64,000 nt of DNA from Octopus sinensis (Eukaryota): positions 17,050,001 through 17,114,000 of the forward strand of contig NC_043017.1 of assembly GCF_006345805.1 (NCBI RefSeq). Reading direction: 5' to 3'. Positions 741 through 64,000 of this stretch are shown one piece after another. The notes below the pieces were generated by a model, which saw only the letters and a program-made list of their open reading frames with translations, made no database searches and was not told where the DNA came from. How positions within the stretch are numbered: the stretch's first letter is position 1; each line of letters opens with the position of its first letter. The position numbers and the translations under genes are program-made.

Positions 741-907
741 GACGTAGGAGTGGCTGTGTGGTAAGTAGCTTGCTCACCAACCACATGGTTCCAGGTTCAG
801 TCCCACTGCATGGCACCTTGAGCAAGTGTCTTCTACAATAGCCTCGGGCCAACCAAAGCCTTGTGAGTGGATTTGGTACATGGAAACTGAAAGAAGCCTG
901 TTGTATA

Positions 908-941
<34 letters not shown>

Positions 942-1114
942 ACATATATATATAATATATATATATTATATATATAATATATATACATATATATACATAT
1001 ATACATATTATATACATATATACATATATATACACATATATATATATATATATATACATATATATATACATATATATATATATACATATATATATACATA
1101 TATATATATATTAC

Positions 1115-1173
<59 letters not shown>

Positions 1174-1240
1174 CATATATATATACATACATATATATAT
1201 ATACATACATATTATATATATATACATATATATATATATA

Positions 1241-1271
<31 letters not shown>

Positions 1272-1299
1272 CATACATATATATATATATACATACATA

Positions 1300-1333
<34 letters not shown>

Positions 1334-1456
1334 CATACATATATATATACATACATATATATATATACATACATATATCTATATATATATATATACATTA
1401 TATATATATATATACATATATATATATACATATAATATATATATATATATACATAC

Positions 1457-1504
<48 letters not shown>

Positions 1505-1633
1505 ACATATATATATATTACATATATATATATATACATATAATATATATATATATATACATATATAATATATATATACATAACCCATGCTAGCATGGAA
1601 AGCGGACGTTAAACGATGATGATGATATATACA

Positions 1634-1667
<34 letters not shown>

Positions 1668-1668
1668 C

Positions 1669-1746
<78 letters not shown>

Positions 1747-6043: not shown

Positions 6044-6265
6044 CCCTTTCGTTACTGTATTCATTTTGAGATGCTCTGTGTTTCTTTCAATTATTTAAAA
6101 ATATAACAAAGAATTTAGTAAAATAACTTAGTTATCATTAAAGCTAGTGTTGTGAATATAAATTGTGACTAAGGTTTGGTGGAAGATTTTTATTCAAAAC
6201 TTATGAAAACAAGACATTTGTACTCAGAGCCAGAGCCGGTTTCAGTCAGGTTAATAACAAAAGGG
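6044..6265 (+). mobile_element. piggyBac-type MITE family 1
   Basis: Ends ccctttcgttac ... taacaaaaggg, with tgaa/ttaa flanks. Homologous copies at 20331 and 20582. Confidence 0.85.
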
Positions 6266-8071
6266 TTAAGCAATTGTCTAATATTTATTTCATGAAAAGA
6301 TGTAGAACATAATAATGCATCTGTAGAACATCTGGATGTTTTGCCTTTCTGATGTTGATGTTTTCAGTAGAGCCTCTTGTGGTTAAGATGTGTATTTTAT
6401 AGAGATTGGCTTATTCCAACAAACTTATTTGCCTTTCCTTTTGGGTTTCTTTCTCTTTGGCCATCGGTGTTGTTGCAGCAGCTGCTGCTCAGACCAGCAG
6501 ATGCTGACATCACTTTTGTGTCTTTTGCTGCTACCAGAAGAGTAAGATGTTACATTGTCTATGAAAACCCCTAAATATGAGAACAGCAGACTAACGGTAT
6601 GACTAGCAAAAGGAATGACAATCGCATCCAATAAAAAACAAAAAAAAATCAAAAGGCACATCACCCTTCAGTAAATTCTGGAACCCAATTGTTTTTGGTG
6701 CCCCTTATGGAAGAACAGTTATCAAATCCTTTGATATTTTCTAAAGAAGTATTTCTTAAACATTTCAAACTTTTCTTTTATTAACACTTGTTACTAACCC
6801 CTTTGATCTGATGCAACACTCTCCCATGCATATACGCATAATACCAGGCCAGAGTTCTGGATGCTAGCTTCATGCAAATGACGAACTTACAGCTGCACCA
6901 CTTGACCATAAGCAAATATTTAACACATCACTGCTTGACTTTAATTATTTACTCAACCTTTAGCACATATTGTTAGCCAAACTTAAGTATGTATTTTTGT
7001 ACTTCTTACATAATCCCATAGCAACCAGCTGAAAATTATCTTTCCATTCCAGTTTATCATTGTATTTTCTATATATTCACACACGCACACATGTGCACTG
7101 GGAATTCATATGATTATGCAACAAGTAATTTATTAATTTTTTTAACCTCTTCCCCTAAAATCCTAAAACTTCCACCCTTTCTCAAACTTTGTTTAAAATA
7201 CAGTCAGTCCAAATTTGTCATGTATGTTTTATTTATAATTTCAAAATAATTTTTGGAATTCAAATTCAAAAAGTTACCAAACATTCATACATTTATCTGT
7301 TTATACAAATGGGTAGATTGAGATTAACAGATGACACTCCTAACTAGAATCAACATCATTCAGATATGTACATAATGCATTTTGGTAACATCTGGACTCA
7401 TATTAATTATGACAGAACATTTTTGTGGCTAACAGATATGTTATCACTATTTTTTTTTTTTTATGAAAGACTGTTCCATCTTGAATGATTTACAAAAACA
7501 CTTGTTTTGTATTTTTTCCATTGATAATTTTTTGCAATCTTACTGTTCGGAAAGACTCTTAAATGCCATCAAAAGATGATCAGCTAAAATAACCAACAAT
7601 AAGCCGTTCCCTTTTGGCTTTCCATTGGCTTCTTTTTTTTTTCCATGAATTAAGAAATATCATCACTAGATTTAACCATCTCCAAGCATTTCTTATGTTT
7701 GAAGATTTGTGTTTCATTAGCTTGGCTGTATCTGCATTACTCAGAGTAATGGATGCAGCATCTACTTCCTTACTGCCACCCACCATTCCTTCCTCAAGTA
7801 CCAGCAACTTAAAAAGATGAAAATTGGAATTCTACAGATCAGCATACTAATGTTCGTAACTCTGAACTGACAGGAATGCTCTTCTTGCTCACCATTACCA
7901 CCACCACCACTGTCGCCACCACCACCATCATCATCATCATAATTCATTTTAATTCTGTAACTCATGTGGAGAACATAGACAGTAAAAGGTTCAATTATTA
8001 GCGATGTAAGTATCAATTTTCAGGGAAAATACAGACATCTGCCAAAAGTACCGTATGTAATATATTAGTGG

Positions 8072-13645: not shown

Positions 13646-14597
13646 ATCAAAGAAACTGTTGTTCACAAAGCTACAAAATTTCAGTCCAAATGTGGTTTTA
13701 GAAACTCTGAGAAAAGTCTTCACACAGCATCAGGCCATAAAATTCGGGTTTCTGTTGAGTGTGCAAAGTGCAGGATTGCTGTATGCCAGGGTAGAGACAT
13801 GTTTTATTTTATTTTTTTTGTGGTGGGGGTGGTTCTACACTTCACAGGTAACAGCTTTAACTTTCTTTAAACATAATATATATTCAACCTACCTGGTCAG
13901 GTAACATGAAAGTTCATTTAGTACTTTTTTTCATAACCCCAGAACTTGCCTAAGACAGTATATGAATCCTTATTTGGATTATATGACTTAAAAAGTGCTC
14001 CAATGTGTTCTAATTTAGTGGTGTATTGTTGAGGTGGGGAGTCTAGCAAACTCTTTTTTTTTTTTTCCATTACCTGTATTGATATCCTTTCAGCATGTGT
14101 GTTATACAAATGGCCTAATTGCTTGCTTTGTCTGCTCATTCTCATGCAACTCATTCAAACAAAAAGCACACAGAATTTAAGATCACTTCATTTGTATTTC
14201 TCAATCGCATTACACCTTTCATTATTTATTTTACAAACGATAAAGAAGAACAATCGGTAAACTCAAATCATTTCATCCTATCAACAAATTTCATGAAATT
14301 CTTGCACCTATGTTTTTGATTTTTATGCGCGGTTGACTGCATCTCTGCTAAAATTTTCAGTTTCTAACAAGTCTGGGAGAGTTACATAGAAATTGTCATA
14401 TATATAGGTGCAATCTTTACCGGAGGCATCAACCTTCTTTACACTGTCTGTGCTGAAAGAAATTTTTTAGATTTTACATAATGAAAGAAAGAAAACAAAT
14501 TTTAGAGAAAAGAGTTTTGTTATACTTGGGGATGGTCATACTTTCTCAATTAAACACATACACTGTATATTTGGTTTTCACTTCAGTTTTATTATTA

Positions 14598-14872
14598 TCA
14601 TCATCATCATCATCATTTAGCGTCCGCTTTCCATGCTAGCATGGGTTGGACGGTTCAACTGAGGTCTGGGAAGCCAGAAGGCTGCACCAGGTCCAGTCTG
14701 ATCTGGCAATGTTTCTACAGCTGGATGCCCTTCCTAATGCCAACCACTCCTTGAGTGTAGTGGGTGCTTTTTACGTGCCACCGGCACAGGTGCCAGACGG
14801 GGCTGGCAACGGCCACGATTGGATGGTGCTTTCTATGTGCCACCGGCACGGGAGCCAGGCAAGGCTGGCAAC
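14598..14872 (-). mobile_element. Family C repeat (RTE 3'UTR-derived)
   Basis: (CAT)n-ttagcgtccgctttccatgctagc block with internal ~50-bp repeats. Confidence 0.9.
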
Positions 14873-19009: not shown

Positions 19010-19430
19010 ATACACCCCAAGATCCCGAGTTCGATTCCAGGCAGTGACCTGAATAATAATAATAATAATAATAACAACAACATCAACATTGAAAAATACC
19101 TATTTCTTTATTACCCACAAGGGGCTAAACACAGAGGGAACAAACAAGGACAGACATAGGTATTAAGTCGATTACATTGACCCCAGTGCTTAACTGGTAC
19201 TTAATTTATCGACCCCGAAAGGATGAAAGGCAAAGTCGACCTCGGCGGAATTTGAACTCACAACGTAACGCAGACGAAATACCGCTAAGCATTAGGAATG
19301 AGAACCCAGGTTTGAAATTTCCCCAAGACACCTGTAGAAGGCTGGAGGGTATATCAGCCAAAACGTTGTGTTAACAACAAACAAGATGAGGACAAATATC
19401 CGTCGAATGTAAATAATGTCTATTAATAAT
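19010..19430 (+). mobile_element. tRNA-headed Penelope-type terminal repeat interrupted by SINE B (19102-19292, - strand)
   Basis: Collinear with 27880-28170 once the SINE B is removed at aaaaatacct|taggaatgag. B-box gttcgattcc present. Confidence 0.8.
19328..19371 (+). ncRNA. Degenerate minimal hammerhead ribozyme
   Basis: ACAC-CTGTAGA-A-GGCTG(10 nt)CAGCC-AAAAC-GTT-GTGT. Stems I and II are intact; the core has two substitutions. Confidence 0.6.
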
Positions 19431-19989: not shown

Positions 19990-20330
19990 ATAATTCTGAT
20001 TTTGGTAGAAGGCCAGTCATTTTGAGGGGAGGGGAATAGTGAATTCCATTGACTCTTGTGTGAATTAAACGCTAAATGTAGAGAATCAGAACAAATACCA
20101 TGAAGCATTTTTTCCGATATGCCATCCTTATGCACCTATAAATGATAGGACATATTATTACATTTCAACGAGGGAACCTATTAGAGATAGCAGCCAAATG
20201 TAGTGGTCTTAGCTAGAAAAATTTTGATCTGTGGTCTGCTCAGTCAGAGCTGACCTGGGGTTAAGCAACAATAAATTACAAAATGATAAAAAAGACAAAG
20301 TGAACAAAAATAGTATGAGTGTATTTTTAA

Positions 20331-20550
20331 CCCTTTCGTTACTGGATTTATTTTGAGATGCTCTGTGTTTCTTTCAATTACTTTAAATATAACAAAGAAT
20401 TTAGTAAAATAACTTAGTTATCATTAAGCTAGTGTTAGGAACATAAATTGTGATTAAGGTTTGGTGGGAGATTTTAATTCAAAATTTATGAAAACAAGAC
20501 ATTTGTACTCAGAGCCAGAGGCAGTTTCAGGCAGGTTAGTATCAAAAGCA
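20331..20550 (+). mobile_element. piggyBac-type MITE family 1
   Basis: TTAA-ccctttcgttac ... atcaaaagca-TTAA. Confidence 0.88.
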
Positions 20551-20581
20551 TTAAGAATTGTTTCTCTATTATATATCTTAA

Positions 20582-20802
20582 CCCTTTTGTTACCATATTT
20601 CTCTTGAGATGCTCTGTGTTTCTTTCAATTAATTTTAAATATAACAAAGAATTTAGTAAAATAACTTAGTTATCATTAAGCTAGTGTAAGGAACACAAAT
20701 TGTGACTAAGGTTTGGTGGGAGATTTTAATTAAAAACTTATGAAAACAAGACATTTGTACTCAGAGCCAGAGCCGGTTTCAGCCGGGTTAGTAATGAAAG
20801 GG
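20582..20802 (+). mobile_element. piggyBac-type MITE family 1
   Basis: TTAA-cccttttgttac ... gtaatgaaaggg-TTAA. Confidence 0.9.
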
Positions 20803-25051: not shown

Positions 25052-25250
25052 GGGTAAAGCTTAGCAGTATTTTGTCTGCTGCTATGTTCTGAGTTCAAAT
25101 TCCGTCGAGGTCGACTTTGCCTTTCATCCTTTCGGGGTCGATAAATTAAGTACAAGTTACACACTGGGGTCGATGTAATCGACTTAGTCCATAATTCTGT
25201 CCTTGTTTGTCCCCTCTGTGTTTAGCCCCTTGTGGGCAATAGAGAAATAA
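25052..25250 (+). mobile_element. SINE family B, 5'-truncated
   Basis: gagttcaaattccg...gtcgactttgcctttcatcctttcggggtcgataaattaagtac. Confidence 0.88.
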
Positions 25251-33229: not shown

Positions 33230-34320
33230 AACCTCTCTGGCTCTGTCAACTCCTGACTTCTCACTGTCATTTACAACATCTCCAAGGTAACGCAAACCAA
33301 TGAACAACCACCTTCAATGTTTCCTGCCTTAGTGGCCACCACATTGATTTCTGTAGAGCCAGATCTACAAAAAAACTTGCTCTCCCGAGTCATGCACTAG
33401 TGATATCTTATCCTTGAGACATTTAGCAGAAAATTTCAATATGTCTTGCATGAGAACCTCTTAGCTAAGTTACCTGCGTATAGACTTCATTCCTCTTGCT
33501 GTCAGTCTGCTTTATTGCAAAGTCTGCTTACACGCTCTCCCGTTTTTTTATATACCAAGTTTTGTTTAAGACATCTTGCACTATTCCTTTTGTACATAAC
33601 ATCATTGCTGTTTATTTACTTTAATAATATATTCATTTGTCAGGCGAGCTGGCAGAAGCGTTGGTAAACCGGGCAAAATGCTCAGCGGTATTTCGTCTGC
33701 CGCTACGTTCTGAGTTCAAATTCCGCCGAGGTTGACTTTGCCTTTCATCCTTTCGGGGTCTATTAAATAAGTACCAGTTAAGCACTGGGGTCAATGTAAT
33801 CGATTAAATCCATTTGTCTGTCCTCTGTGTTTAGCCCCTTGTGGGCAATAAAGAAATAAATATATTCATTTATCAGATTTTGTCACTTGTACTGATCCTT
33901 GACTATTGATGTAGAGAACATCATGGGAACCTGACAACCTAGTCTCCCCTTCAAAAAAGAAAAAACAGCTTTGCCATCTCTACATATATCAAAATCATCC
34001 ACCTCACCATTTCTTACATACAGCACACAACTAAAGTGCACAAGTGTGCAGTCTGTTAACCTGCTCATGATTCTACTGCACCTTATGTGCATCCATAGTT
34101 TTGCACTAGACATACCTTATGGAATTCATATCTTCTTTCCTACATATTGCACAGAGCAGGGTTTTGTCTGTTTTCTTGTAAAATATTTTAGTTACAGGTA
34201 AGATAAATTTTACCTCATATGATTCTAGGCTTTGTTTTCATGCCTGGAATTTCTTCTCTAAGCTAGCAACAGATTCAAGTGATTCATCAATATGAGTGAG
34301 TTCTAGAGTGTGCAGAAGTT
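33230..34320 (-). mobile_element. Two old RTE LINE fragments with PHD-like insert, separated by SINE B
   Basis: LEKKFQA..QSLES, CAICRKEDMNSI...CKLWMHIRCSRIMSRLT, LKVV...RYLGDVV. Confidence 0.65.
33642..33858 (+). mobile_element. SINE family B with ~17-bp TSD
   Basis: TSD aatatattcattt(g/a)tca at 33626-33642 and 33859-33875. Confidence 0.92.
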
Positions 34321-40075: not shown

Positions 40076-40344
40076 TCATCATCATCATCGTTTAACGTCC
40101 ACTTTCCATGCTAGCATGGGTTGGACGGTTCAACTGGGGTCTGGCAAGCCCGAAGGCTGCACCAGGCCAGTCAGATCTGGCAGTGTTTCTACAGCTGGAT
40201 GCCCTTCCTAACGCCAACCACTCCGAGAGTGTAGTGGGTGATTTTATGTGCCACCGACACAGGTGCCAGACGAGGCTGGCAGACGGCCACGCTCGGATGG
40301 TGTTTTTTATGTGTCACCAACACAGGTGCCAGACGAGGCTGGCA
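40076..40344 (-). mobile_element. Family C repeat (RTE 3'UTR-derived)
   Basis: Inserted in a TA tract. Confidence 0.9.
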
Positions 40345-40622
40345 TATATATGTATCTATTTATATATGTATGTATTTTTATATATATATGTATCTGTATA
40401 TATATATATATATGTATCTATATATACATATATATATATAGTTGGAATTTACAACAAACAAAACAAAAGATGAAGACAGGTGTGTAAACAACAAACAGAT
40501 GTATTAGTTTAACACTCAGGAAGTGAGAGAATCTTTTGTTTCGAGCCTATGCTCTTCAACAGAAAGGAACACAGAAATAAACAGAGAAATAAAAAAAGGT
40601 TTAGTGGCGAGTGATCAATCAC

Positions 40623-40670
<48 letters not shown>

Positions 40671-40715
40671 CTATATATATGTATCTATGTATGTATATAT
40701 ATGTATCTATGTATG

Positions 40716-40750
<35 letters not shown>

Positions 40751-40758
40751 GTATCTAT

Positions 40759-40795
<37 letters not shown>

Positions 40796-40932
40796 CATAC
40801 ATATATATATCTATATATATATATCTGTGTGTATATATATATATATGTATGTATATATATATATATGTATGTATATATATATATATATGCATGTATATAT
40901 ATATCTGTATGTATATATATATATATATATAT
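40345..40932. repeat. TA-rich microsatellites flanking a ~180-bp insert (40441-40620)
   Basis: Seen directly. Confidence 0.9.
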
Positions 40933-41204
40933 AAAATTATAAATTAGGGCATCTATGAGATACCAACATGCTGGAAATAGTAGCCATGATCTGACTTTAA
41001 AACCACCTTAATTGTCCATATATCAACATGGAGAGAAAACAAAGAGACAAGATGAAACTAGTAAAAAATTCCTGGATAATCCTAGGTCTCGCCTCAAGAC
41101 AACCCTGGTGGAGATTGAAAACAGCCTGAAACAATCATGTGTGAAGCAGAGAGTAGACAAAGTAGCCTGGGTTGTAAAAAATAAGTCAAATCTAAATCTA
41201 AGCC

Positions 41205-43629: not shown

Positions 43630-44270
<641 letters not shown>

Positions 44271-45340: not shown

Positions 45341-45852
45341 CAACCCTTGTGGTTGAAAAATGGTTACAGGTGAGGAATTTATGGCAAGGTGAATAATTAT
45401 GAGGAATTATAAATATGGAAGAGATAAGAGTAGAGGACAATCAGTAGAATTTGTGTAAAATGAGGGGGTTATAGGGTGACCAATGATATATTTGTTGGGG
45501 GAGGTAGGAGACGGGAGATGACTGACAGTGCAGAAAAAGTGTGGGGAGAAGTGGGTGTGTGTGCAACAAGAGCAGTTAAAGAAAGGATTTTTTGAAGGCA
45601 TCCTAGGGGTGGTGGGGTGTAGATGGTGACTAGTGAAATAAAGAGAGAACGAAGGGATGAGAGCATCATAGAGATAGGGATGGGAGCAGAAGACAAAAAC
45701 AGTGCAAGCATACTGAGTGGGAGGGCTGAGGAGAGCGGGGATTGAAAAGGAGACTGTGGAGGACAGTGGGTAAATTGCAGCAAGACTCTCCCAGCCATCA
45801 GCAATCTCCTTGTTAGAATTCGTCCTTCCATATTTGCCAGAGAGAAAGCAGA

Positions 45853-46083
45853 AGGTGGCAAGCTGGCAGAAACGTTAGCACGCCGGGCAAATGCGTAGCT
45901 GTATTTCGTCTGCCGTTATGTTCTGAGTTCAAATTCTGCTGAGGTCAACTTTGCCTTTCATCCTTTCGGGGTCGATAAAATTAGTACCAGTTGTGTACTG
46001 GAGTCAATGAAATCGACTTAATCTGTTTGTCTGTCCTTGTTTGTCCTCTCTGTGTGTAGCCCCTTGTGGGCAGTAAAGAAATA
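45853..46083 (+). mobile_element. SINE family B, full length, 14-bp TSD
   Basis: TSD agagagaaagcaga at 45839-45852 and 46084-46097. Confidence 0.93.
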
Positions 46084-47860: not shown

Positions 47861-48280
47861 ACACTGCCCCCCCCCCCAAAATACTTCAGTTGCCATTGGT
47901 CCCTGACTGCAATCTCACATCAGATTAATTCTTGTTTGTTTTTGATGTTATTTCTGTTACGTGCAAATACCCTGATCTACCCATGGCTGATCTACCCAAT
48001 TACGATTGCTTTCTAGATAATATTTTCTTCTTTGACTTCACTACTACTCCTGAACCTGCTAGCTGCTTATCGCTCCTCTTCAGGTCAACCCAACTCCCCT
48101 CCCCTCTCTATCTCTTTGTCAAATATCCAGTGTCTTATCTCTTAGATACCGTACTAAACACTTCTAATTACTCTCTCCTTGAACTGCAACACGGTAACTT
48201 AGTCATTGTTTTGTGCTAATTTCTACCAATATAGACTTGATATCAATTAACTTTATTTCAATTTATTTTTCTTATTTTAG

Positions 48281-48640
48281 GTTCTTCTGGAAATAAGGAT
48301 AACCCTTTACCACCTGGTTTTAATGTTCCAACTGGTGGTCAGCCTAGCTTCCCTCCACAACCATACGGCCAATCAGGCTATCCACCTCAGGCCTCCCAAC
48401 CAGGTTACCCTCCACAACCTTCTCAACCTGGTTACCCTCCACAGCCTTCTCAACCAGGCTACCCAGCACAGCCAGGCTACCCAGCACAGCCTTCACAACC
48501 AGGCTACCCAGCACAGCCTTCACAACCAGGCTACCCAGCACAGCCTTCACAACCAGGCTATCCAGCACAGCCTTCACAACCAGGTTACCCATCGCAGCCT
48601 TCACAACCAGGTTACCCATCGCAGCCAGGCTACCCAGGAG
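48281..48640 (+). CDS. ANXA7: Annexin N-terminal low-complexity exon: SSGNKDNPLPPGFNVPTGGQPSFPPQPYGQS followed by 11 GYP motifs (GYP[P/A/S]QPSQP)
   Basis: Acceptor tttcttattttag, donor gag|gtaaga, 360 nt, phase 1-1, open frame. The GYP-rich tail is typical of ANXA7/ANXA11-type annexins. The symbol denotes similarity, not proven orthology. Confidence 0.9.
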
Positions 48641-48757
48641 GTAAGATTTTTATGTATTGATTTCTTTTTATCTATTTTTATAAGAGAGACACAAAGAAAG
48701 AGAGAAAGAAGAAGGAAGATGTAGTTGAGATTCAATTAAATTAAATCTATTATATTA

Positions 48758-52368: not shown

Positions 52369-52507
52369 CCAAAACCTTTGACCGATGATATGAGGAAAAT
52401 GGCCATGTATGGAGGTCACCAAGTATTCCGCCCTACAGTAGTACCGGTCAACCCTTTTTCTGCAGAGGAAGATGCTAAAGTGTTGCGAAATGCTATGAAA
52501 GGATTTG
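52369..52507 (+). CDS. ANXA7: Annexin linker and start of repeat 1: PKPLTDDMRKMAMYGGHQVFRPTVVPVNPFSAEEDAKVLRNAMKGF(G)
   Basis: Acceptor tttactttttag, donor ttg|gtgtgt, 139 nt. Contains the annexin motif DA..LR.AMKGFG. Confidence 0.93.
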
Positions 52508-52579
52508 GTGTGTAGAACCCAGAATTTTTTAATACTATTTACTTCATCAATACTTTTAATTTGCTAGAACCGTCTTTAA

Positions 52580-55291: not shown

Positions 55292-55443
55292 AAAGTGAAA
55301 AGGTTTTTGAATTAGAGTTGCCAAGGTAATCCTCTTGATGACGATGTTACTGGAAGATTATGATGATGTTACTGATGATAATGTTGTTGTTTACACATGA
55401 TTACACATCATATTATTGAAGATGGTATTATACTTTATTTCAG

Positions 55444-55538
55444 GAACCGATGAGTCTGCAATAATTTTCATCATAAGTAAAAGAACCAATAGCCAAAGAC
55501 AGCAAATTGCTCAGATGTTCAAGACAATGTATGGCAAG
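55444..55538 (+). CDS. ANXA7: Annexin repeat 1: GTDESAIIFIISKRTNSQRQQIAQMFKTMYGK
   Basis: cag| and |gtaac boundaries, 95 nt. Contains GTDE...R...QR...YGK. Confidence 0.97.
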
Positions 55539-56735
55539 GTAACAACTTTTTAGGGAGCCTTAATCTTTAGTCTCCTTGTAAATCTTCCCTAATTCATATA
55601 ACCCTGTAAGAGATTTATTTACATGGATTATAAATACACTACATACAAATGTAAGCAAATGCTATGCATTACTTGTATAGAGCACATATTAAAGATGAAT
55701 ATGTTTGTGCGTGTGGATGTGTGCGTGAATCATTCGAAACGGTAGCCTGTAGGCATTTCTCTGTCGTCTCCAAAATGCGAGGCAAGATAATTCCATCTGC
55801 TGGTGTGTCAGCTCCGATTGTGTTTCTTTCTCTGTTTTTCCCTTGTATTTATAATATTTGAGACAGCTAGAAAGATAGACATACTGCAACAGAGTTACTA
55901 CTTAAGTAGGTCAGCACTTGTCCAGTTGAACTTCGCCTGACATGGCTGAGGTCGTAGGTCAAAGGGAGATGATCAATCACTTTTTGACAGAACAAAGGGA
56001 TCTTTAAATTTCGTGCCTATACATGCATTGGTTTTTGACGACCGATGATTCTTGGATTCGATTTCGAATCTAAGCTTAGAGAAGGAAGTGCTAACTCTTA
56101 CAACCCTTTCTCTTTATTTTGACCTAAGTCTATACGCTCCTGGTTCTCAACTGGGGCCCACATAAGATTTTGTTGCTAAAATTTATCTGCAATAAATTGT
56201 TTATATTCCTACAATAGACAAAGTATTTAAACCATTTTCTTTTTTATACAGTTCCTAATAATATTTACTTATAAAAATATAATAGGATTTTTTTAAACAT
56301 TGAATTATTATGAGGGTCCACCTGAATTAAACAGGAATCAAAAGGGTCCATAGGTAAACAAGGGTTGAGAACCAATGTTATACAGAGATATCTTCAGCAG
56401 CCTGTAAATCAAATTGTTTCCAATTCTTTCTGTGGTGCCTGGATCCCATACTCAGTTATCTTCTGCAGGCTCTGATACAACTCCAATGGGGCTGACAACA
56501 GTTTTATGTTTGTATCAAAAGTGAGACATTTCATTGATATGCTTAGATTCTTTTCTGAAGTAATTGAAACGTGTTTCACTAAATTCCTACTCAAAGGGAA
56601 GGCAAAGGACAGGAATTCCTCTGCTTGTTGCTTTGACAATTTACTTCAAAAGTATTTCTTTCCAATTGTCACATTTAGTCTGAAAGAATTAAATCGTCAT
56701 GTATCTTTCTTTTTCTTTTTTTTTTTTTTTTCAAG

Positions 56736-56849
56736 GATTTGATAAAGGACCTGAAATCTGAATTAAGTGGGAACTTTGAAAATGTTGTCTTAGCCATGTT
56801 CAAAACTCCGGCTTATTTTGATGCCTGGTCTTTACAAGAAGCCATTTCG
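56736..56849 (+). CDS. ANXA7: Annexin repeat 1/2 junction: [38 protein letters not shown]
   Basis: Poly-T tract then caag|, donor |gtaagt, 114 nt. [13 protein letters not shown] and DAWSL match my recollection of ANXA7. Confidence 0.97.
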
Positions 56850-57061
56850 GTAAGTTATGAAGAAAATTGCAAAGATCATACATTTTGTTTTTAATGTTGA
56901 ATATCTAATTTTGCGTGATGTAGTAAATAAAAAAGAACTCTTTCTGGTTCTGTTTTCTGATATTTTTCACATTTCTCCCTCTCCAAATCAGTAAGCAAGC
57001 AGATAGAAATTATTTTATTCATTGGGACACAAAACTCTACTTGTGAAGACCTGTTGAGGCA

Positions 57062-57444
57062 AATGATAATCAAAATCAAAATCGAAATCGATCAACATCA
57101 ATGGAAATTGTAGCTGCGATACCAGTGCCAGTGGCACGTAAGAGAACCATCCGAATGTGGCTGTTGCCAGTGCCACCCCGACTGGCCTCCGTGCTGGTGG
57201 CACATAAAAAGCACCATCCGATCGTGGCCATTTGCCAGCCTCGCCTGGCACCTGTGCCGGTGGCACGTAAAAAGCACCCACTACACTCATGGAGTGGTTG
57301 GCGTTAGGAAGGGCATCCAGCTGTAGAAACTCTGCCAGATCAGACTGGGCTTGGTGCAGCCTTCTGGCTTCACAGACCCCAGTTGAACCGTCCAACCCAT
57401 GCTAGCATGGAAAGTGGACGTTAAACGATGATGATGATGATGAT
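57062..57444 (+). mobile_element. Family C repeat, longest copy
   Basis: Its 5' end overlaps the RTE 3'UTR at ~42295-42345. (GAT)n tail. Confidence 0.92.
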
Positions 57445-58140
57445 TGAAACAAAATTTACAATTGTTTTGTATCCACCCATCTATCTTCTCTGTCCTAGGC
57501 AGGTTGTGGGGCTAGAGTCCTCAGGCACCCTCTCTATAAGGTCCTATCATATGCAACAGTTATCACACTTTCTAGCTGGGTTCCCAAATGTGAGCAACTG
57601 GGATTATGGAAGGTGGATGATTATGTTTGAAAGAGATTTGCAATGAGACAGTTCTTTCTTAATATGCCCCACCAGTTTTACGTTACATAAAGGGTTACTA
57701 GTGAGTAAACTGCTCTAGAGAGGATCCTCCACATTCAACCAAAATTCAAAAGGAGTTTCAAAAGGGGAAACTAGTTTAATCCTCCATTCAATCTTGATGT
57801 TTCCAATAATATAGCTGGAAGCTTCTTGATACTAATTAGGCAGCATTTCTGAAGAAGCCATAGATATCATTAAATCTTTAATTCCATAACTCGGCAGTCA
57901 TGCATCACACCAGTGGGAGGAACCCACTTTCTCCCACTTTACAGTGGTGGCAATGAGGAAAAACAAATTTACATGGAGTGAAAAAAAACCATTCACATGG
58001 AGAGTTTAAACTTATTCATGTGGAAAATTAAATAACTCGACAAAAAAGAAACGAAAATTTTGTTGTGCAAACTTAAGAAAATCATAAAATATGGAAGACT
58101 TGTTAGCTGAGGTAATTGAGTTGTAAAAACAGCAACAACA

Positions 58141-58498
58141 GGAGGCACAATGGCCCAGTGGTTAGGGCAGCGGACTCGCGGTCGGAGGATCGTGGTTTCG
58201 ATTCCCAGACCGGGCGTTGTGTGTGTTTATTGAGCAAAAACACCTAAAGCTCCACGAGCCTCCGGCAGGGGGTGGTGGCGACCCCTGTTGTACTCTTTCG
58301 CTCCAACTTTCTCTCACTCTTTCTTCCTGTTTCTTGTCCCCGACTTCCTACACAACCGCTGAGCCTGGATGCGCACTCATTCATCCGTCGATGCTCTCGG
58401 TGTCGGGGGTTGACCTGCTTTCTCTTCTGTGGGTCTTACGAATAGCAAAGGACCACGTTTCGGACTTCTCAAAGACCGTTCACTCAACAAACAAACAG
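58141..58498 (+). mobile_element. tRNA-derived SINE family D, full length, 12-bp TSD
   Basis: A box tggcccagtgg, B box ggtttcgattcc, TSD acagcaacaaca at 58129-58140 and 58499-58510. CpGs are retained. Confidence 0.92.
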
Positions 58499-58719
58499 AC
58501 AGCAACAACAACAACTCAAGGAACAACGAGAACAACAACAAGGATTACAGCAGCAGATGTTAAAACTAATGAAGTTGGTAACCAAACTGGAGAATACATT
58601 TTCACCTGACCATGTAGCAAATTCCATAAGCGAATTCAAATATGACCCCGAAGAAGGAATAACCTTTGGGGCTTACTTTGGAAGGTTTGAACAAATTTTT
58701 GAAAAAGAACATCAGGATT

Positions 58720-58990
58720 ACGTAAAGTATACTAGCCATCTCAATATGGCTAACCACTAAGGGTGGGTATTACTGTAGCTTTTAGCCCCAGGAGATCATC
58801 GTCTCCAGCTGGTTTTAGGCACACAAGGGCACAGAAAGTGTGCCCAAAGCCAGCTGGAGACGATGATCTCCTGGGGCTAAAAAGCTACAGTAACACCCAC
58901 CCTTTGTGGTTAGCCATATTGTGATGGCTAGTATACTTTACGTTGTCGAGCGGTTACTGTTTACATCTCGTTTAGAGATTTATTATTAAT
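58720..58990. mobile_element. 271-bp insertion: 224-bp hairpin plus 47-bp tail, 9-bp TSD
   Basis: TSD atcaggatt at 58711-58719 and 58991-58999. Removing the insertion restores gag EKEHQDWMDEMK. Confidence 0.9.
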
Positions 58991-59469
58991 ATCAGGATTG
59001 GATGGATGAAATGAAAACGTACCTAGTTTTAAGAAAACTAGTGACAGCAGAGCATGAGAAGTATGGTAAGTTCATATTGCCAAAAAAAGGGTCCGACACA
59101 GTTGCCATTTTGTGCAAAATGTTTAGTGAAAAAAGTTCACTGGTTAATTCTGGATGGAAATGTTTAAACATAGAAAAGAGTAAGATGAAGACTTCACTAC
59201 TTACAGAGGCAGAGTCAACAGAGAATATGAGAGATTTAGGTTGGAAATGCTTACTCTAAATTCTTTCAAGTGTTTGAATTTTACACAAGGATTGACAGGT
59301 AAAATGGATGCAGAAATCTGAATGAAAATTCTAGCAAAATTGGGAATGAACCAGGATTTGACATTGCAGTAACTGTCGGAAGAGTGTGACATGATATTAG
59401 AATTAAGGCATGACATGGAAGAAATTCAATGGAAAGAGTGTTTTCACATAAGACAATGCAAAAAAGTCA

Positions 59470-60044
59470 GAAGACAAATAAAGTATTGCAGGAAAAACAG
59501 AAAAAATATCAGGATGTAAACCCAGGTATGGCATGTGGTGGGATGCACCTGTGAAAAGAATGTCCATATAAAAGAGCAAAGTGTTTTTGCTGTGGGTTTA
59601 CAGGATATATAAAAACATGGAAAATTTTAAACAATTGAGAAAATTGTTGAAGGTAAATAGTTGATTAGAAACTGTATATCCTAGTTTTTACAATAGGTGC
59701 ATCATATCCCTGTTTGTTGTAAGGGGCAACCAAAAGGAAGGGCATCCAGCCATAAAGTACTGCCTCTAACCCATGCCAACATGGAAATGTGATCCTCTGT
59801 TTGGAATTAATCTGGTCATATGCTTCTTATATTGATTGAAGGCAAACAACATACATGGTTAATATGAATCATGAAGCAACTTATTTGCACCTTCATCTGA
59901 AGACAAATAAAGTATTGCAGGAAAAACAGAAAAAATATCAGGATGTAAACCCAGGTATGGCATGTAGTGGGATGCACCTGTGAAAAGAATGTCCATATAA
60001 AAGAGCAAAGTGTTTTTGCTTTGGGTTTACTGGACATATAAAAT
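59470..60044 (+). repeat. Y-X-Y direct duplication, period 429 bp
   Basis: Y is a gag segment; X is a copy of the intron sequence at 62223 onward. Confidence 0.95.
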
Positions 60045-61043
60045 CACAGTGCGGAACTAAAATGATAGGAAAATGGAACAAACAAGAAAAAATAAATAGT
60101 TTGTCAGCAAGAAAAGGTGTGGCTACAACAAACAGAAAATTCGTGAATGTGAGAATTGAAACCACTAATGTCGGAATGCAGTTAGACGCGAGAAGTGACA
60201 TCACAATCATAAATGAGAAAACATGGGAACAAATGGGTAAACCAAAATTATGTAGTTCAAATATTTCTCAGGCATTTGTAATAATTCACATAGAAAATTA
60301 AATAACTCTACAAAAAAGAAACAAAATTCTTGTTGATCAAACGTACAATAATTATAAAATATGGAAGACTTGTTAGCTGGGGTAGTTGAGGTCGAACCAA
60401 AAAAATGAATGTTTATGTGTTGAAAGAATCCATGAATTTAATTGGCTTTGAATGTATGGAGAAATTTAATTAATGGGATACACCCATAAGTGTATTGTGC
60501 AATAATGTAAATGGAGCAGTCAAACAATTGAATGAGGTCGATGAATTGAGACAAAAAATGAAAGAAACTTTCTCAAAAGATTTCAATGGCTGGATGCCCT
60601 TCCTAACACCAACCACTCCAAGAGTGTAACGGGTGCTTTTATGTGCCACCAGCATAGGTGCCAGTTGTGTGACATCAGAGTTGCGTGATATATATATACC
60701 TATGTGTATGTGTCTTTGTGTCTGTTTGTCCCCCCCACCACTGCTTGCCAACCGGTGCTGATGTATTTACATCCTTGTAACTTCAGCAAAAGGGAATGAC
60801 AGAATAAGTACCAGGCTTTAAGAAAATAATACTGTGGGGCTTTTCGTTCAACTAAAAATTCTCCAAAGCATTGCACCAGCATGGCCACAGTCTAATGACC
60901 GAAACCAGTAAAAGATAAAAGGCAGAAGCTGCTGAAGCTGCAAAACTTCCTGTAAAACATTAAAAGCGTGTGTGTGTGTTCGCGTATGTGTGTACGTATG
61001 TATGTAGTGTCTTTAAAGAACTGATTATGGTATAATGTCCATA

Positions 61044-61279
61044 ATGTAAGGCGGCGAGCTGGCAGAAACGTTAGCCAGTCGGGCGAAATGCGTAGCCATA
61101 TTTCGTCTGCCGTTACGTTCTGAGTTCAAATCCCACCGAGGTCGACTTTGCATTTCATCCTTTCGGGGTCGATAAATTAAGTACCTGTTATGCACTGGGG
61201 TCGATGTAATCGACTTAATCCGTTTGTCTGTCCTTGTTTGTCCTCTCTGTGTTTAGCCCCTTGTGGGTAATAAAAAATA
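61044..61279 (+). mobile_element. SINE family B, full length, 15-bp TSD
   Basis: TSD ggtataatgtccata at 61029-61043 and 61280-61294. Confidence 0.93.
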
Positions 61280-61359
61280 GGTATAATGTCCATACTCACC
61301 ATTTTTATATCTCCAATGTTTGATTGATTATATTGTTGTTGTTGTTGTTTTATTGATAG

Positions 61360-61450
61360 GGTATTGGAACAAAAGAATCTGTTCTAACGGAAATCCTTTG
61401 CACAAGAACCAATGCTGAGATTCGAGAAATCCAGGACATTTATAAACGCT
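61360..61450 (+). CDS. ANXA7: Annexin repeat 2: GIGTKESVLTEILCTRTNAEIREIQDIYKR
   Basis: gatag| and |gtatgt boundaries, 91 nt. Has the GxGT calcium loop and EILCTRTN.EIREI. Confidence 0.97.
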
Positions 61451-62137
61451 GTATGTTTTTTTCTTAATTACTTATTCATTTGAGTATTTATATATTTTGT
61501 TTTTGTAGTGGAATGAACACCCCTAAAAACAATTATGCTGATATGCTCCACCCCGCCATCCATCTATCTCTTAATTCTTGCACTTGAAAGTGGATGAAAA
61601 AAATTCTTCATTACAGAACAAGATATTATTGTTTGCTTCTGACTGGAACACAGTAACATTTCAATTTTGTTAGAGTTGGATCAGAATGTAAAAATTTGAA
61701 TTAAATTCTCTGTTCTTTTGGGTTTCAAATTTACTTGACAGTGAGGCTATTGTCTTGGACAGGGGAATCAAGTCTTTGACTCTGGATGTAACTAATCATA
61801 ACCACACAGATAATTGTAATTAGAAGGGTTTCACTGAAGGATTCTTTCCAATGTTGGAAACACTTAGGGAGTAGATATCATACCTTTATGAGTAAAGGTA
61901 TGGTATCTACTTGCATTAAATAAAAGACCTGTTCAAGATTTATAATTCATAAATATGCCACAGAAACCAAAGTAAAGCACGATGGCTTTGGACATCTTTG
62001 GTTTGTGGAAGGATTACTGCATTAAGCTGTTTAATTGTGGAAGATGAAACTGGTGAAACATGACCGCCATTTTAGGTAAAATGTGGGATTTAGCTGTTGA
62101 TTTCTGTTGATTTATTATTTTTTAAATTTCTCTGCAG

Positions 62138-62217
62138 CATTTAATCGGAATCTGGAAAAGGATATTATGTCCGACACAAGTGGATATTTTAAGCGTTTGC
62201 TTGTTTCATGCTGTCAG
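62138..62217 (+). CDS. ANXA7: Annexin repeat 2 end: (S)FNRNLEKDIMSDTSGYFKRLLVSCCQ
   Basis: tctctgcag| and |gtaagt boundaries, 80 nt. Has LEKDI.SDTSG.F.RLLVS. The gene continues beyond the window. Confidence 0.97.
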
Positions 62218-62222
62218 GTAAG

Positions 62223-62913
62223 TGGAAAATTTTGAACAATTGAGAAAATTGTTGAAGGTAAATAGTTAATTAGAAACTGTATATCCTAGTTTTTACAATA
62301 GGTGCATCATATCCTTGTTTGTTGTAAGGGGCAACCAAAAGGAAGGGCATCCAGCCATAAAGTACTGCCTCTAACCCATGCCAACATGGAAATGTGATCC
62401 TCTGTTTGGAATTAATCTGGTCATATGCTTCTTTTATTGATTGAAGGCAAACAACATACATGGTTAATATGAATCATGAAGCAACTTATTTGCACCTTCA
62501 TCTGAAGACAAATAAAGTATTGCAGGAAAAACAGAAAAAATATCAGGATGTAAACCCAGGTATGGCATGTAGTTGGATGCACCTGTGAAAAGAATGTCCA
62601 TATAAAAGAGCAAAGTGTTTTTGCTGTGGGTTTACAGGATATATAAAAACATGGAAAATTTTAAACAATTGAGAAAATTGTTGAAGGTAAATAGTTGATT
62701 AGAAACTGTATATCCTAGTTTTTACAATAGGTGCATCATATCCCTGTTTGTTGTAAGGGGCAACCAAAAGGAAGGGCATCCAGCCATAAAGTACTGCCTC
62801 TAACCCATGCCAACATGGAAATGTGATCCTCTGTTTGGAATTAATCTGGTCATATGCAAACAACATATATGGTTAATATGAATCATGAAGCAACTTATTT
62901 GCACCTTCATCTG
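62223..62913 (+). repeat. X-Y-X direct duplication, period 429 bp
   Basis: Has the same two junctions as 59470-60044. Confidence 0.95.
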
Positions 62914-63176
62914 TTAAAGTTTGGATTTCAAGGCTACACCACCCGGGTGGCTTTTTCAGTTACTTTTAAGAAGTTACAAACAATCAATCCGAAGACAAAA
63001 CTTACAAAATTAAAAAAAATATTGGTTTTTATCAAAAGGCTATAAAAGTAAAAATGTATAAAAGTTATAAACTATAAAAATGCTACAAAAAAGAAAAAAA
63101 GAACCCAGGAACATCTTTGTTTCTCAGTTCAAATATGTAAATTTTATTAATGTTAAAACTAAAAGATTTTACTTAA

Positions 63177-64000
63177 CCCTTTCGTTACCAAACCGCCCAA
63201 AGCCGCCTGAAAAAAATTTTGGTTTATGAGACCAAACCGCCCAAAGCCGCCCGAATTTACCTATTCATATTTAAATGAGAATATCAGAGCAAATCTCTTC
63301 AGTACATTCGTGAAAACACGTATTATACTTCGTAAACAGTTCAACTACAGTTTTGTACAATAATCGAAGTGTAATTTTAATTCCGTGAATTTTGGGAGAT
63401 TTTTTTCCGAAATTTGTTCCTATTGTGTTTTTTCAAAATTTGTAATTCTGACAAAAAATGGATACGAATTTCATTATATCAAGCAGCGAGTCAGAATTCG
63501 AAGGATTTTCTACTGAAGACCTTCATAAATCTAACTCTATGACTGAAAAAAAAAAGCATGTGGTATTTGATAATGAATCTGATGTTTCATTTTCCGAAAG
63601 TGAAAACAGTGAATCTGAGATCTCCGATAGCGATAAAGAAAATGAATTGGCACCTGAATGGAGTGAAAATTTAAAAACTGTTTCTTTCGGTGATTTTTCT
63701 GAAGAAACTGGACCAAGCCACAGACTTTCCCAGAAGAGTAAAGCCTTAAACTATTTCTTTTTACTTTTTCGAATGAGCCTATTTGAAATCATTACGGTGA
63801 AAACGAACCGTTACGCTAAACGTAAACAAAGCGAAAGAAACGATAGTTTGTTATTTCCCACAACCTTAAATGAAATTAAGGCCTATTTTGCCATAAATAT
63901 TATTATGGGTATCAGAAAGTTACCCAGAATAACAAATTCTATCGTAAAATTTTGTTGTATACCCAATTGAATATTAGCTAATAACCCATTTTCTCTAGCG
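63177..64000 (+). mobile_element. piggyBac element left end with truncated transposase ORF (63458-63970)
   Basis: TTAA-CCCTTTCGTTAC, 21-bp subterminal direct repeats (63187-63207, 63231-63251), acidic N-terminus, then FFLLF...TNRYA...TTLNEIKAYFAINIIMGIRKLPRI. The ORF stops before the catalytic DDD core. Confidence 0.9.

What the first reader, a model, noticed from the sequence alone, without database searches (positions are those of the whole stretch)
59470..62913. Reciprocal Y-X-Y / X-Y-X rearrangement with the SNP mosaic expected from a circular 429-bp donor
Seen: Y (~145 bp, Gypsy gag, native at 59470) and X (~280 bp, native from intron position +6 at 62223) lie in different annexin introns, 2.3 kb and two exons apart. 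Locus 1 reads Y1-X1-Y2 and locus 2 reads X2-Y3-X3. Both have a 429-bp period and the same two junctions (ggatatataaaa-aca-tggaaaatt and cttcatct-g-aagacaaat). The variants are a mosaic. Y3 matches Y2 at the 5' site (gtag vs gtgg in Y1) but matches Y1 at the 3' sites (tgtggg..acaggatat vs tttggg..actggacat in Y2). X1 matches X3 at the 5' sites (taaac, tgatt, ccctg) but matches X2 at the 3' sites, where X3 has a 20-bp deletion and catat. Inference: one donor carrying both junctions, either a small X+Y circle or a tandem (XY)n, entered each locus by a single crossover or template switch within the locally homologous segment. This resembles serial translocation via circular intermediates, here at microDNA scale in an intron. 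The exon donor GTAAG is untouched.
Basis: partly seen in the sequence, partly recalled or inferred. Interest (0 to 1): 0.85.

Follow-up and report, generated by a model that had tools for sequence, protein, structure and literature searches.

The report
Reciprocal 429-bp duplication between annexin introns
Two short non-coding segments 2.2 kb apart in an octopod annexin gene have each been copied next to the other with identical joints; this is a real but probably neutral scar of DNA-break repair, and it needs no free DNA circle to explain it.

Summary
Locus 1 reads Y1-X1-Y2 (59470-60046) and locus 2 reads X2-Y3-X3 (62223-62912). Both have a 429-bp period and the same two joints. J1 (Y end to X start) is blunt. 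J2 (X end to Y start) has 1 nt of microhomology.

Y is an arbitrary in-frame piece of a dead Ty3/Gypsy-type gag. About 100 related polyproteins read straight through both native Y borders, and the knuckle's last Cys lies outside Y. X starts at +6 of the next-but-one annexin A7-like intron.

Polarising Y with those relatives shows Y3 shares a derived base with Y2 at its 5' side and another with Y1 at its 3' side. So Y3 is a true recombinant.

Any homology-driven transfer produces this mosaic, so it does not identify a circle. The most economical history has two stages. First, a head-to-tail joint and a deletion-type joint built the Y+X composite at one locus. Later, after about 2% divergence, a break in the single-copy partner 2.6 kb away was repaired from that composite.

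A popped-out circle remains possible for the second stage. No read-level or cross-species check was possible. Interest is moderate to low.

The parts
59470..59617 (+). Y1: left Y copy at locus 1. Its 5' border is native (flank A, gag). Its 3' border is joint J1.
   Evidence: Relatives read through A|Y1: window KSQ|KTNKV against KSWKTNKV in P0001.
59618..59898 (+). X1: the copy of intron segment X inserted inside the retroelement gag.
   Evidence: No relative of the gag has any sequence aligned to it.
59899..60046 (+). Y2: right Y copy at locus 1. Its 5' border is joint J2. Its 3' border is native (flank B).
   Evidence: Window GHIKS|QCGTK is collinear with relatives. The last Cys of the CCHC knuckle (60050-60052) lies outside Y.
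60047..62222 (+). M: the 2176-bp native spacer between Y and X. It holds the rest of the gag-protease fragment, SINE-like repeats and annexin exons A and B.
62223..62503 (+). X2: left X copy at locus 2. Its 5' border is native, at intron position +6 after exon B. Its 3' border is joint J2.
62504..62651 (+). Y3: the copy of the gag segment Y inside the annexin intron. It is a recombinant, Y2-like at its 5' side and Y1-like at its 3' side.
   Evidence: four-haplotype test with outgroup.
62652..62912 (+). X3: right X copy at locus 2, with a 20-bp deletion and one substitution. Its 3' border is native intron.
59607..59626 (+). J1 at locus 1 (identical copy at 62641-62660). Y end joined to X start: ...ATATAAAA[A]CA|TGGAAAAT. 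It is blunt and deletion-type. The bracketed A is either a substitution of native T or part of a 3-nt filler.
59891..59908 (+). J2 at locus 1 (identical copy at 62496-62513). X end joined to Y start: CTTCATCT-G-AAGACAAAT. It has 1 nt of microhomology and is head-to-tail, the type made by tandem duplication or circularisation.
61360..61450 (+). Annexin exon A (91 nt).
62138..62217 (+). Annexin exon B (80 nt) with intact donor GTAAGT. Exons A and B together are 171 nt (57 codons, in frame).
58557..60578 (+). Decayed Ty3/Gypsy-type gag-protease fragment (DUF7083, two CCHC knuckles, D[ST]G protease) that hosts Y. It is frameshifted, carries stops, and is interrupted by a foldback insert.

Best explanation
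This is a real, two-stage, probably neutral germ-line rearrangement inside an annexin A7-like gene of an octopod.

Stage 1 built a Y+X composite next to one of its parents. This needed two end-joining-type joints. J2 is head-to-tail and joins the end of X to the start of Y. It is exactly what a 2605-bp tandem duplication of the unit [Y-spacer-X] gives. J1 is deletion-type and joins the end of Y to the start of X. It is exactly what loss of the redundant 2176-bp spacer, with its duplicated exons A and B, from one unit gives. A single double template switch would give the same product. The result was either A-Y-X-Y-M-X-D or A-Y-M-X-Y-X-D.

Stage 2 came after the copies had diverged by about 2%. 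A double-strand break in the still single-copy partner, 2.6 kb away in cis or on the sister chromatid, was repaired by synthesis-dependent strand annealing on the composite. Both broken ends copied outward through J1 and J2 into the flanking repeat and annealed there. This produced the second triplet. Its middle copy is a recombinant, and its two outer copies keep native sequence on their outer sides.

Shown: the structure, the shared joints, the native status of Y, the recombinant nature of Y3, and the unequal divergence classes.

Inferred: the order of events, which locus came first, and the molecular intermediate.
For: - Identical J1 and J2 at both loci, each present exactly twice.
- The offset between loci is 2605 bp, which equals Y + M + X. 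J2 is therefore the junction expected from a simple tandem duplication of that unit, and J1 the junction expected from deleting M.
- J1 is blunt and J2 has 1 nt of microhomology, as expected for end joining.
- Exons A and B sum to 171 nt, so a duplicated unit would add 57 in-frame codons. That gives a reason for loss of one M.
- Y is native at locus 1. About 100 Ty3/Gypsy-type relatives align collinearly across A|Y1 and Y2|B and have nothing matching X.
- Polarised Y sites. Column 68: G is ancestral (59/79 relatives), and derived A is shared by Y2 and Y3. Column 137: His is ancestral (95/105), and derived T is shared by Y1 and Y3. Column 123: Cys is ancestral (98/105), and derived T is private to Y2. 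Only the Cys123+His137 combination hits Pfam zf-CCHC. Y3 is therefore Y2-5' plus Y1-3', as two-ended repair predicts.
- The order of private sites matches the transfer model (joint P = 0.02). Divergence is 2.2% between native and composite parts against 0.47% after transfer (P = 0.027).
- Each of the three X copies and three Y copies has its own distinguishing state, at Y columns 68/71 and X columns 205-224. They are not copy-paste duplicates.
- The same two-step logic has been proposed for Drosophila satellites: birth of a hybrid repeat, then spread to loci holding one partner by interlocus gene conversion or eccDNA (PMC7403614).
Against: - Sequence alone cannot separate SDSA from integration of a circle popped out of the first locus. 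Both predict exactly this mosaic.
- Which locus came first is not resolvable, because the predictions are symmetric.
- X cannot be polarised: the Argonauta hians orthologous intron does not align. The X mosaic alone has P = 0.1.
- Four of the five Y1/Y2 differences lie within 24 columns next to J1 (P about 0.012). Simple neutral divergence does not explain that.
- The X border lies exactly at intron position +6, which this model treats as coincidence or as a selective lower bound.
- No reads, second assembly or close relative could be examined, so an assembly artefact is not excluded.
Confidence: 0.5

Rival explanations
1. Serial translocation through a circle derived from one locus. Stage 1 is as above. 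Intrachromatid recombination between the two flanking repeats of the first triplet then popped out a 429-bp X+Y circle. That circle integrated by one homologous crossover into the single-copy partner on a sister or homologous chromatid that kept the first triplet.
For: It predicts exactly the observed mosaic. The circle's Y would be Y2-5' plus Y1-3', which is Y3. The size is close to the microDNA range. A precedent exists at the 0.5-Mb scale in the cattle KIT Cs29/Cs6 alleles (PMC12235870 abstract; Durkin et al. 2012 cited). The Drosophila satellite paper proposes eccDNA reintegration as a way arrays reach new loci.
Against: It needs two crossovers plus transfer to another chromatid, because the donor chromatid loses its triplet. 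Integration through 148-281 bp of 97-98% homology is expected to be much rarer than non-crossover repair. That expectation rests on established knowledge of mitotic and meiotic DSB repair and was not tested here. Nothing in the sequence requires a circle.
Confidence: 0.2
2. One reading: an independent small X+Y circle, or a tandem (XY)n array elsewhere, carried both joints and entered each locus separately by one crossover or template switch.
For: Same joints at both loci and the same mosaic.
Against: It needs the most events: two joints plus two integrations in one lineage. The donor differed from the native sequences by about 2% at integration, and derived states lie on both sides. A short-lived circle cannot achieve that unless it came from a divergent haplotype. 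No third X+Y copy exists in the 64 kb. No ORF from X or the joints matched anything in 5.8 billion proteins, although that search is insensitive.
Confidence: 0.08
3. Assembly or haplotype-merge artefact. Only one triplet, or two different alleles, exists in the animal, and the assembler threaded repeat copies wrongly or fused two haplotypes.
For: A path through a repeat graph from J1 to J2 would also give X1 = X3-5' plus X2-3'. No reads were available.
Against: Each copy has its own distinguishing state: Y haplotypes G-G, A-G and A-T at columns 68/71, and X with A, T or the deletion at columns 205-224. Three distinct sequences of each segment must therefore exist in the reads. The window has no Ns. 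The whole structure is 3.4 kb, within a single long read. Even a merge of two alleles, each with one triplet, would still need the homology-driven transfer.
Confidence: 0.1
4. Tandem triplication of the 2605-bp unit [Y-M-X], followed by loss of M from the two outer units. The second loss came by gap repair or gene conversion from the first.
For: With M removed, the present sequence is a perfect (YX)3 array. J2 is a tandem-duplication junction.
Against: It needs at least four events and passes through alleles with three copies of two coding exons. It explains nothing extra.
Confidence: 0.07
5. X+Y is a unit of a dispersed or mobile repeat, or arose from a spliced or circular RNA copied back into DNA.
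For: X contains a 30-60-nt remnant of a dispersed repeat. X is preceded by AG and followed by GT.
Against: Y is an arbitrary in-frame gag piece that cuts a zinc knuckle. There are no target-site duplications or terminal structures and no other copies in the window. The single shared G at J2 cannot serve as both the donor G and the acceptor G. The Y end is followed by CA, not GT, and there are no polypyrimidine tracts. Rfam found nothing.
Confidence: 0.03

Closest known systems
Serial translocation by circular intermediates (cattle colour-sidedness, KIT Cs29/Cs6; Durkin et al. 2012, cited)
   Same: A segment is joined to foreign sequence. The composite then returns to the segment's own locus through homology, leaving the parent sequence duplicated around the foreign piece. 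The head-to-tail joint is permuted relative to chromosomal order.
   Different: The scale is about 1000 times smaller (429 bp against about 0.5 Mb). Both partners lie 2.2 kb apart in one gene, not on two chromosomes. Both insertions are homology-flanked, so there is no non-homologous integration step. A circle is not required, because the head-to-tail joint equals a plain tandem-duplication junction. No phenotype is known.
Hybrid-repeat birth followed by interlocus gene conversion or eccDNA reintegration (Rsp-like/1.688 satellites, Drosophila simulans clade; PMC7403614)
   Same: It is a two-step logic. A non-homologous joint fuses two sequences. The fusion then spreads by homology to loci that already hold one partner, and the same junction sequence recurs at different loci. 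SDSA with template switch and eccDNA are both considered and cannot be separated.
   Different: Here the partners are single-copy sequences, not satellites. There are only two loci. The spread is reciprocal, to both parents. The joints show 0-1 nt of microhomology rather than 4-7 nt.
Repeat gain during double-strand-break repair by synthesis-dependent strand annealing (yeast and Drosophila gap-repair work; recalled from established knowledge, reviewed in papers listed)
   Same: Both ends copy a template flanked by direct repeats and anneal out of register. This gives an added repeat unit with a mosaic middle copy and an unchanged donor.
   Different: Those are experimental systems with tandem arrays. 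This is a natural germ-line product with an ectopic template 2.6 kb away.
Complex tandem duplication with templated insertion (FoSTeS/MMBIR)
   Same: A duplication carries a nearby sequence inserted at its junction, which is the stage-1 product.
   Different: Microhomology at the joints is 0-1 nt rather than the usual 2 nt or more. A second, homology-driven stage is needed.
microDNA / small eccDNA
   Same: The 429-bp unit is in or near the microDNA size range and comes from a genic, intronic region.
   Different: No circle was observed. I know of no microDNA shown to re-integrate by homology in a germ line (reviews found were not read in depth).

Membership tests
Serial translocation via circular intermediates | The copy carries a head-to-tail joint that permutes the chromosomal order of the source ends. 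| tested here: met
   J2 joins the X end (distal) to the Y start (proximal). The same joint is expected from a 2605-bp tandem duplication, so it is not specific.
Serial translocation via circular intermediates | A composite of donor and recipient sequence returns to a parental locus by homologous recombination. | tested here: met
   Recombinant Y3 and the outer copies keep native outer parts. SDSA meets this feature equally.
Serial translocation via circular intermediates | First integration is non-homologous, at a foreign locus. | tested here: not met
   Both triplets are flanked by duplicated homologous sequence. No non-homologous integration site exists.
Serial translocation via circular intermediates | Physical evidence of the circular molecule. 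| not testable with these tools
   No reads or eccDNA libraries were available.
Tandem duplication plus internal deletion, then ectopic homology-directed repair | One joint equals the tandem-duplication junction of a contiguous unit, and the other equals a deletion junction inside that unit. | tested here: met
   The 2605-bp offset equals Y + M + X. J2 is end-of-X to start-of-Y and J1 is end-of-Y to start-of-X.
Tandem duplication plus internal deletion, then ectopic homology-directed repair | The transferred tract is bounded by homology, with a mosaic middle copy and shared derived alleles in incompatible groupings. | tested here: met
   With outgroup, all four haplotypes occur at Y columns 68 and 137. 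The site order has joint P = 0.02.
Tandem duplication plus internal deletion, then ectopic homology-directed repair | Intermediate alleles exist (one triplet only, or duplicated exons). | not testable with these tools
   Only Argonauta hians was retrievable, and its introns do not align.
FoSTeS/MMBIR complex rearrangement | Microhomology of 2 nt or more at template-switch joints. | tested here: not met
   J1 has 0 nt, with a possible 1-3-nt filler. J2 has 1 nt. This lowers the claim of membership but does not exclude it.
Dispersed repeat / transposable element unit | Further copies, target-site duplications, terminal repeats. | tested here: not met
   No other copy in 64 kb. No target-site duplications. 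Y borders cut a gag zinc knuckle. Genome-wide copy number was not testable.
Ty3/Gypsy LTR retrotransposon (host of Y) | Gag with CCHC knuckles followed by protease, RT, RNase H and integrase in that order. | tested here: inconclusive
   The window fragment has only DUF7083, two degenerate knuckles and a D[ST]G-like protease. Full-length relatives show DUF7083, zf-CCHC, Asp protease, RVT_1, RNase H, Integrase_H2C2 and rve. Closest relative is XP_014774132.1 from Octopus bimaculoides at 67%.
Annexin (host gene) | Annexin repeat encoded by the flanking exons. | tested here: met
   Pfam PF00191, E 3e-28. 87% identity over 93 aa to annexin A7 of Argonauta hians.

The most novel reading that the evidence does not exclude
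A microDNA-sized (429-bp) chimeric circle, made from two intronic segments of one gene, existed in an octopod germ line. It re-entered a parental locus by homologous recombination, or both parental loci in the strong form. That would be serial translocation via circular intermediates at a scale about 1000 times smaller than the cattle KIT case, and it would show that small eccDNA can write itself back into the germ line.
Probability: 0.25. Interest if true: 0.6.

Novelty: new member of a known kind. Interest (0 to 1): 0.33.

Why it matters
If the structure is real, as it probably is, it is a clean natural record of a two-stage rearrangement. Two non-homologous joints create a chimeric segment, and homology then carries that chimera back into its other parent.

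It illustrates a caution of general use. A reciprocal A-B-A / B-A-B architecture with a SNP mosaic is often read as proof of a circular intermediate. Here it is equally the product of ordinary two-ended break repair.

A practical consequence follows. The gene now carries two directly repeated blocks of about 0.85 kb (429-433-bp stretches, 94-98% identical) around exons A and B. This sets up recurrent in-frame loss or gain of 57 codons of an annexin repeat by unequal recombination.

No function of the element itself is indicated.

Tried and rejected
1. External confirmation: nothing found.
- Exact look-ups of three window ORFs found nothing.
- X and Y cores were absent from metagenome contigs.
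- A concatenated query of all ORFs spanning J1, J2 and the native borders hit only an Argonauta annexin among 5.8 billion proteins.
- Annexin queries returned no close cephalopod orthologue.
- The collections do not hold this genome, and the word-index search is insensitive here.

2. Argonauta hians orthologous locus (L001). The exons are conserved. The introns do not align with X or Y, and there is no retroelement. It gives no information on intermediates.

3. Star phylogeny (three copies made at once, then independent mutation). Rejected for Y because of derived states shared in incompatible pairs. Not rejectable for X alone.

4. Junction-associated mutagenesis as the sole source of the differences. 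Rejected because derived states occur in both the native and the composite copies (Y2 has derived column 123; Y1 and Y3 have derived column 137). Nine substitutions in about 400 bp is also far above known error rates of repair synthesis.

5. Origin of the joints from splicing, circRNA or cDNA. Rejected on splice-site grounds.

6. piggyBac involvement. TTAA abuts the X end, and a piggyBac-like element starts at about 63175. However, there is no TTAA on the other border and no terminal repeats at X or Y.

7. CACAGTG at the native Y end (60045-60051). Noted as a probable coincidence.

8. Rfam scan of the window: no family.

9. TRF does not report the 429-bp period, because each locus holds only 1.35-1.95 units.
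Full report
**Observation**

Reading the region, the repeat finder and fixed-offset self-comparison confirm the structure.
- Locus 1: Y1 59470-59617, X1 59618-59898, Y2 59899-60046.
- Locus 2: X2 62223-62503, Y3 62504-62651, X3 62652-62912.
- Both loci have a 429-bp period. Corresponding copies in the two loci are 2605 bp apart.
- The two junction strings each occur exactly twice in the window: J1 at 59607 and 62641, J2 at 59891 and 62496.

J1 joins the Y end to the X start without microhomology: ...ATATAAAA[A]CA|TGGAAAAT. The bracketed A replaces the native T, or ACA is a 3-nt filler. J2 joins the X end to the Y start through one shared G.

The copies are 96.6-98.6% identical. They are the most similar repeats in the window; all other pairs are at or below 95%. 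No other X or Y copy exists in the 64 kb. The only exception is a 30-60-nt remnant of a dispersed repeat in the middle of X. The window has no Ns.

**Context**

The + strand carries an annexin gene.
- Exons at about 56735-56849, 61360-61450 and 62138-62217 together encode a full annexin repeat (Pfam E 3e-28).
- They are 87% identical over 93 residues to annexin A7 of the octopod Argonauta hians.
- Further exons lie at 48280-48645, 52369-52512 and 55443-55538.
- Locus 1 lies in the intron 56850-61359. Locus 2 lies at the start of the intron that begins at 62218.
- X2 starts at intron position +6, so the donor GTAAGT is intact.
- Exons A and B total 171 nt.

Y lies in a decayed retroelement. The upstream ORFs match DUF7083. 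The frame through Y contains two degenerate CCHC knuckles and a D[ST]G-like protease. A full HMMER scan with the window's own gag-protease stretch found 161 relatives. The long ones have the order DUF7083, zf-CCHC, aspartyl protease, RT, RNase H, integrase, which is Ty3/Gypsy-type. The nearest is an Octopus bimaculoides protein at 67% identity. The host is therefore an octopod. The species could not be determined.

**Which positions are native**

Relatives align collinearly through flank A into Y1 and through Y2 into flank B. Their residues for Y align twice and nothing aligns to X1. The last cysteine of the second knuckle lies just outside Y, in flank B. Y is thus an arbitrary internal piece of gag, native at locus 1, and X1 plus one Y is an insertion there. 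X has unique intron flanks only at locus 2. X being native there is an inference.

**Is the mosaic real**

With three sequences, every variable site is a singleton. The mosaic could therefore be three copies mutating independently. Two tests address this.

First, site order. The private sites of the left copies lie 5' of those of the right copies, as a transfer model predicts. The probability is 0.10 for X, 0.20 for Y and 0.02 jointly. This is suggestive only.

Second, polarity. About 80-105 related gag proteins were tallied at the variable codons.
- Column 68: Gly is ancestral (59/79). Y1 keeps it, and Y2 and Y3 share the derived Ser.
- Column 123: Cys is ancestral (98/105). Y1 and Y3 keep it, and Y2 has derived Phe.
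- Column 137: His is ancestral (95/105). Y2 keeps it, and Y1 and Y3 share derived Tyr.
- Only the combination Cys123 + His137 is recognised by Pfam zf-CCHC.

The ancestral state, Y1, Y2 and Y3 show all four combinations at columns 68 and 137. Y3 is therefore a true recombinant of Y2-like 5' and Y1-like 3' sequence.

**What the mosaic does and does not say**

Let the native order be A-Y-M-X-D. Any homology-driven way of placing a Y+X composite into a parental segment gives the same pattern. The outer copies are native on their outer sides, and the middle copy carries donor sequence. If the donor is the other locus, the middle copy is a hybrid of that locus's two outer copies. This holds for three cases:
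- a free circle crossing over once;
- a circle popped out of the other locus;
- a double-strand break whose two ends invade the homologous copy at the other locus, copy outward across J1 and J2 into the flanking repeats, and anneal there (SDSA).

The mosaic proves homology-driven transfer and shared ancestry of the joints. It does not identify a circle.

**Timing**

Sites that separate native from composite parts number 9 substitutions plus a 20-bp indel in 409 columns (2.2%). Sites that separate a transferred tract from its source number 2 in 429 (0.47%), binomial P = 0.027. Derived states lie on both the native and the composite side. The difference is therefore accumulated divergence, not only mutagenesis at the joints. 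One chromosomal copy of the composite existed for a considerable time before the second triplet was made. This argues against one free donor entering both loci, unless it came from a divergent haplotype.

**Most economical history**

The 2605-bp offset equals Y + M + X. J2 is therefore precisely the junction of a tandem duplication of [Y-M-X]. J1 is precisely the junction of a deletion of M from one unit. The duplication would have added 57 in-frame codons to the annexin, so loss of one M is plausible. Both joints look like end joining (0-1 nt of microhomology). One double template switch would give the same product. This yields one triplet. A later break in the single-copy partner, repaired from the composite 2.6 kb away, yields the other. 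That makes two or three ordinary events with no extrachromosomal persistence.

Which locus came first cannot be told, because the predictions are symmetric. I put about 0.5 on this SDSA version.

**Unexplained**

- Four of the five Y1/Y2 differences fall within 24 columns next to J1 (P about 0.012).
- The X border lies exactly at intron +6.
- The native Y end abuts CACAGTG, and the X end abuts TTAA.
- I treat the last three as coincidence. For +6, the alternative is the most upstream point that leaves the donor site single.

**Comparison with known cases**

The cattle KIT Cs29/Cs6 alleles share the logic of a composite returning home by homology. They differ in three ways: a non-homologous first integration, two chromosomes, and a 1000-fold larger scale.

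The closest conceptual match is the Drosophila Rsp-like/1.688 work. There, a hybrid repeat born by a non-homologous joint spreads to loci holding one partner by interlocus gene conversion or eccDNA. The same junction recurs at several loci, and the two vehicles cannot be separated.

This finding is a small, unusually clean, reciprocal instance in single-copy DNA.

**Limits**

No reads, no second assembly and no close relative could be reached. The Argonauta orthologue has introns that do not align. Reality of the structure rests on internal evidence: each of the six copies has its own distinguishing state.

Noticed in passing
window 58720-58992: A 273-bp insert flanked by a 9-bp direct repeat ATCAGGATT (58711-58719 and 58993-59001). 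It splits the DUF7083 part of the gag. It is mostly a near-perfect 224-bp palindrome (arms 58720-58824 and 58838-58943, 95-96% complementary), like a foldback or MITE. Removing it restores the reading ...EHQD|WMDEMK.
   Followed up: partly
window 58014-58125 and 60284-60395: A direct repeat of about 110 bp at 85% identity, 2270 bp apart, on either side of the gag-protease fragment. It is older than X/Y. It may be LTR remnants or an earlier local duplication. The upstream copy is followed at once by a tRNA-like SINE head.
   Followed up: partly
window 63175-64000: A piggyBac-like element. It has the terminus TTAACCCTTTCGTTACC at about 63175 and an ORF at 63458-63970 matching DDE_Tnp_1_7 (E 2e-8). 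It runs off the window. The same terminus begins a 252-bp unit repeated 1.9 times at 20327-20793 (related copy at 6038-6277), suggesting piggyBac-derived MITEs.
   Followed up: partly
window 61048-61285 (also 19096-19293, 25056-25249, 33643-33864, 45852-46083): A tRNA-like SINE family at 82-91% identity between copies. A second dispersed family of about 270 bp (for example 14597-14858, 57182-57444, 60581-60664) carries the motif GGATGCCCTTCC that also sits inside X. The same motif occurs many times in the Argonauta hians locus, including 11 nt after the orthologous exon B (L001 35283-35310).
   Followed up: partly
window 48280-48645: The annexin's N-terminal exon encodes about 10 imperfect 27-bp (9-aa, QPGYPxQPS-like) repeats, as in the Pro/Gly/Tyr-rich head of annexin A7. 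The Argonauta protein has a longer array.
   Followed up: no
window 904-1746 and 43652-44270; also 40344-40933: Long degenerate (TA)n tracts of 0.6-0.85 kb. They appear as large self-complementary matches in self-BLAST.
   Followed up: no
L001 35330-35780 (Argonauta hians): A tandem array with a period of about 62 bp starts about 60 bp into the intron after the orthologue of exon B. This is the same intron start that carries X-Y-X in the window. The sequences are unrelated to X.
   Followed up: no
window 60045-60051 and 62913-62916: The native 3' border of Y abuts the heptamer CACAGTG. The native 3' border of X abuts TTAA. Both are probably chance, and no matching feature exists at the other borders.
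   Followed up: partly
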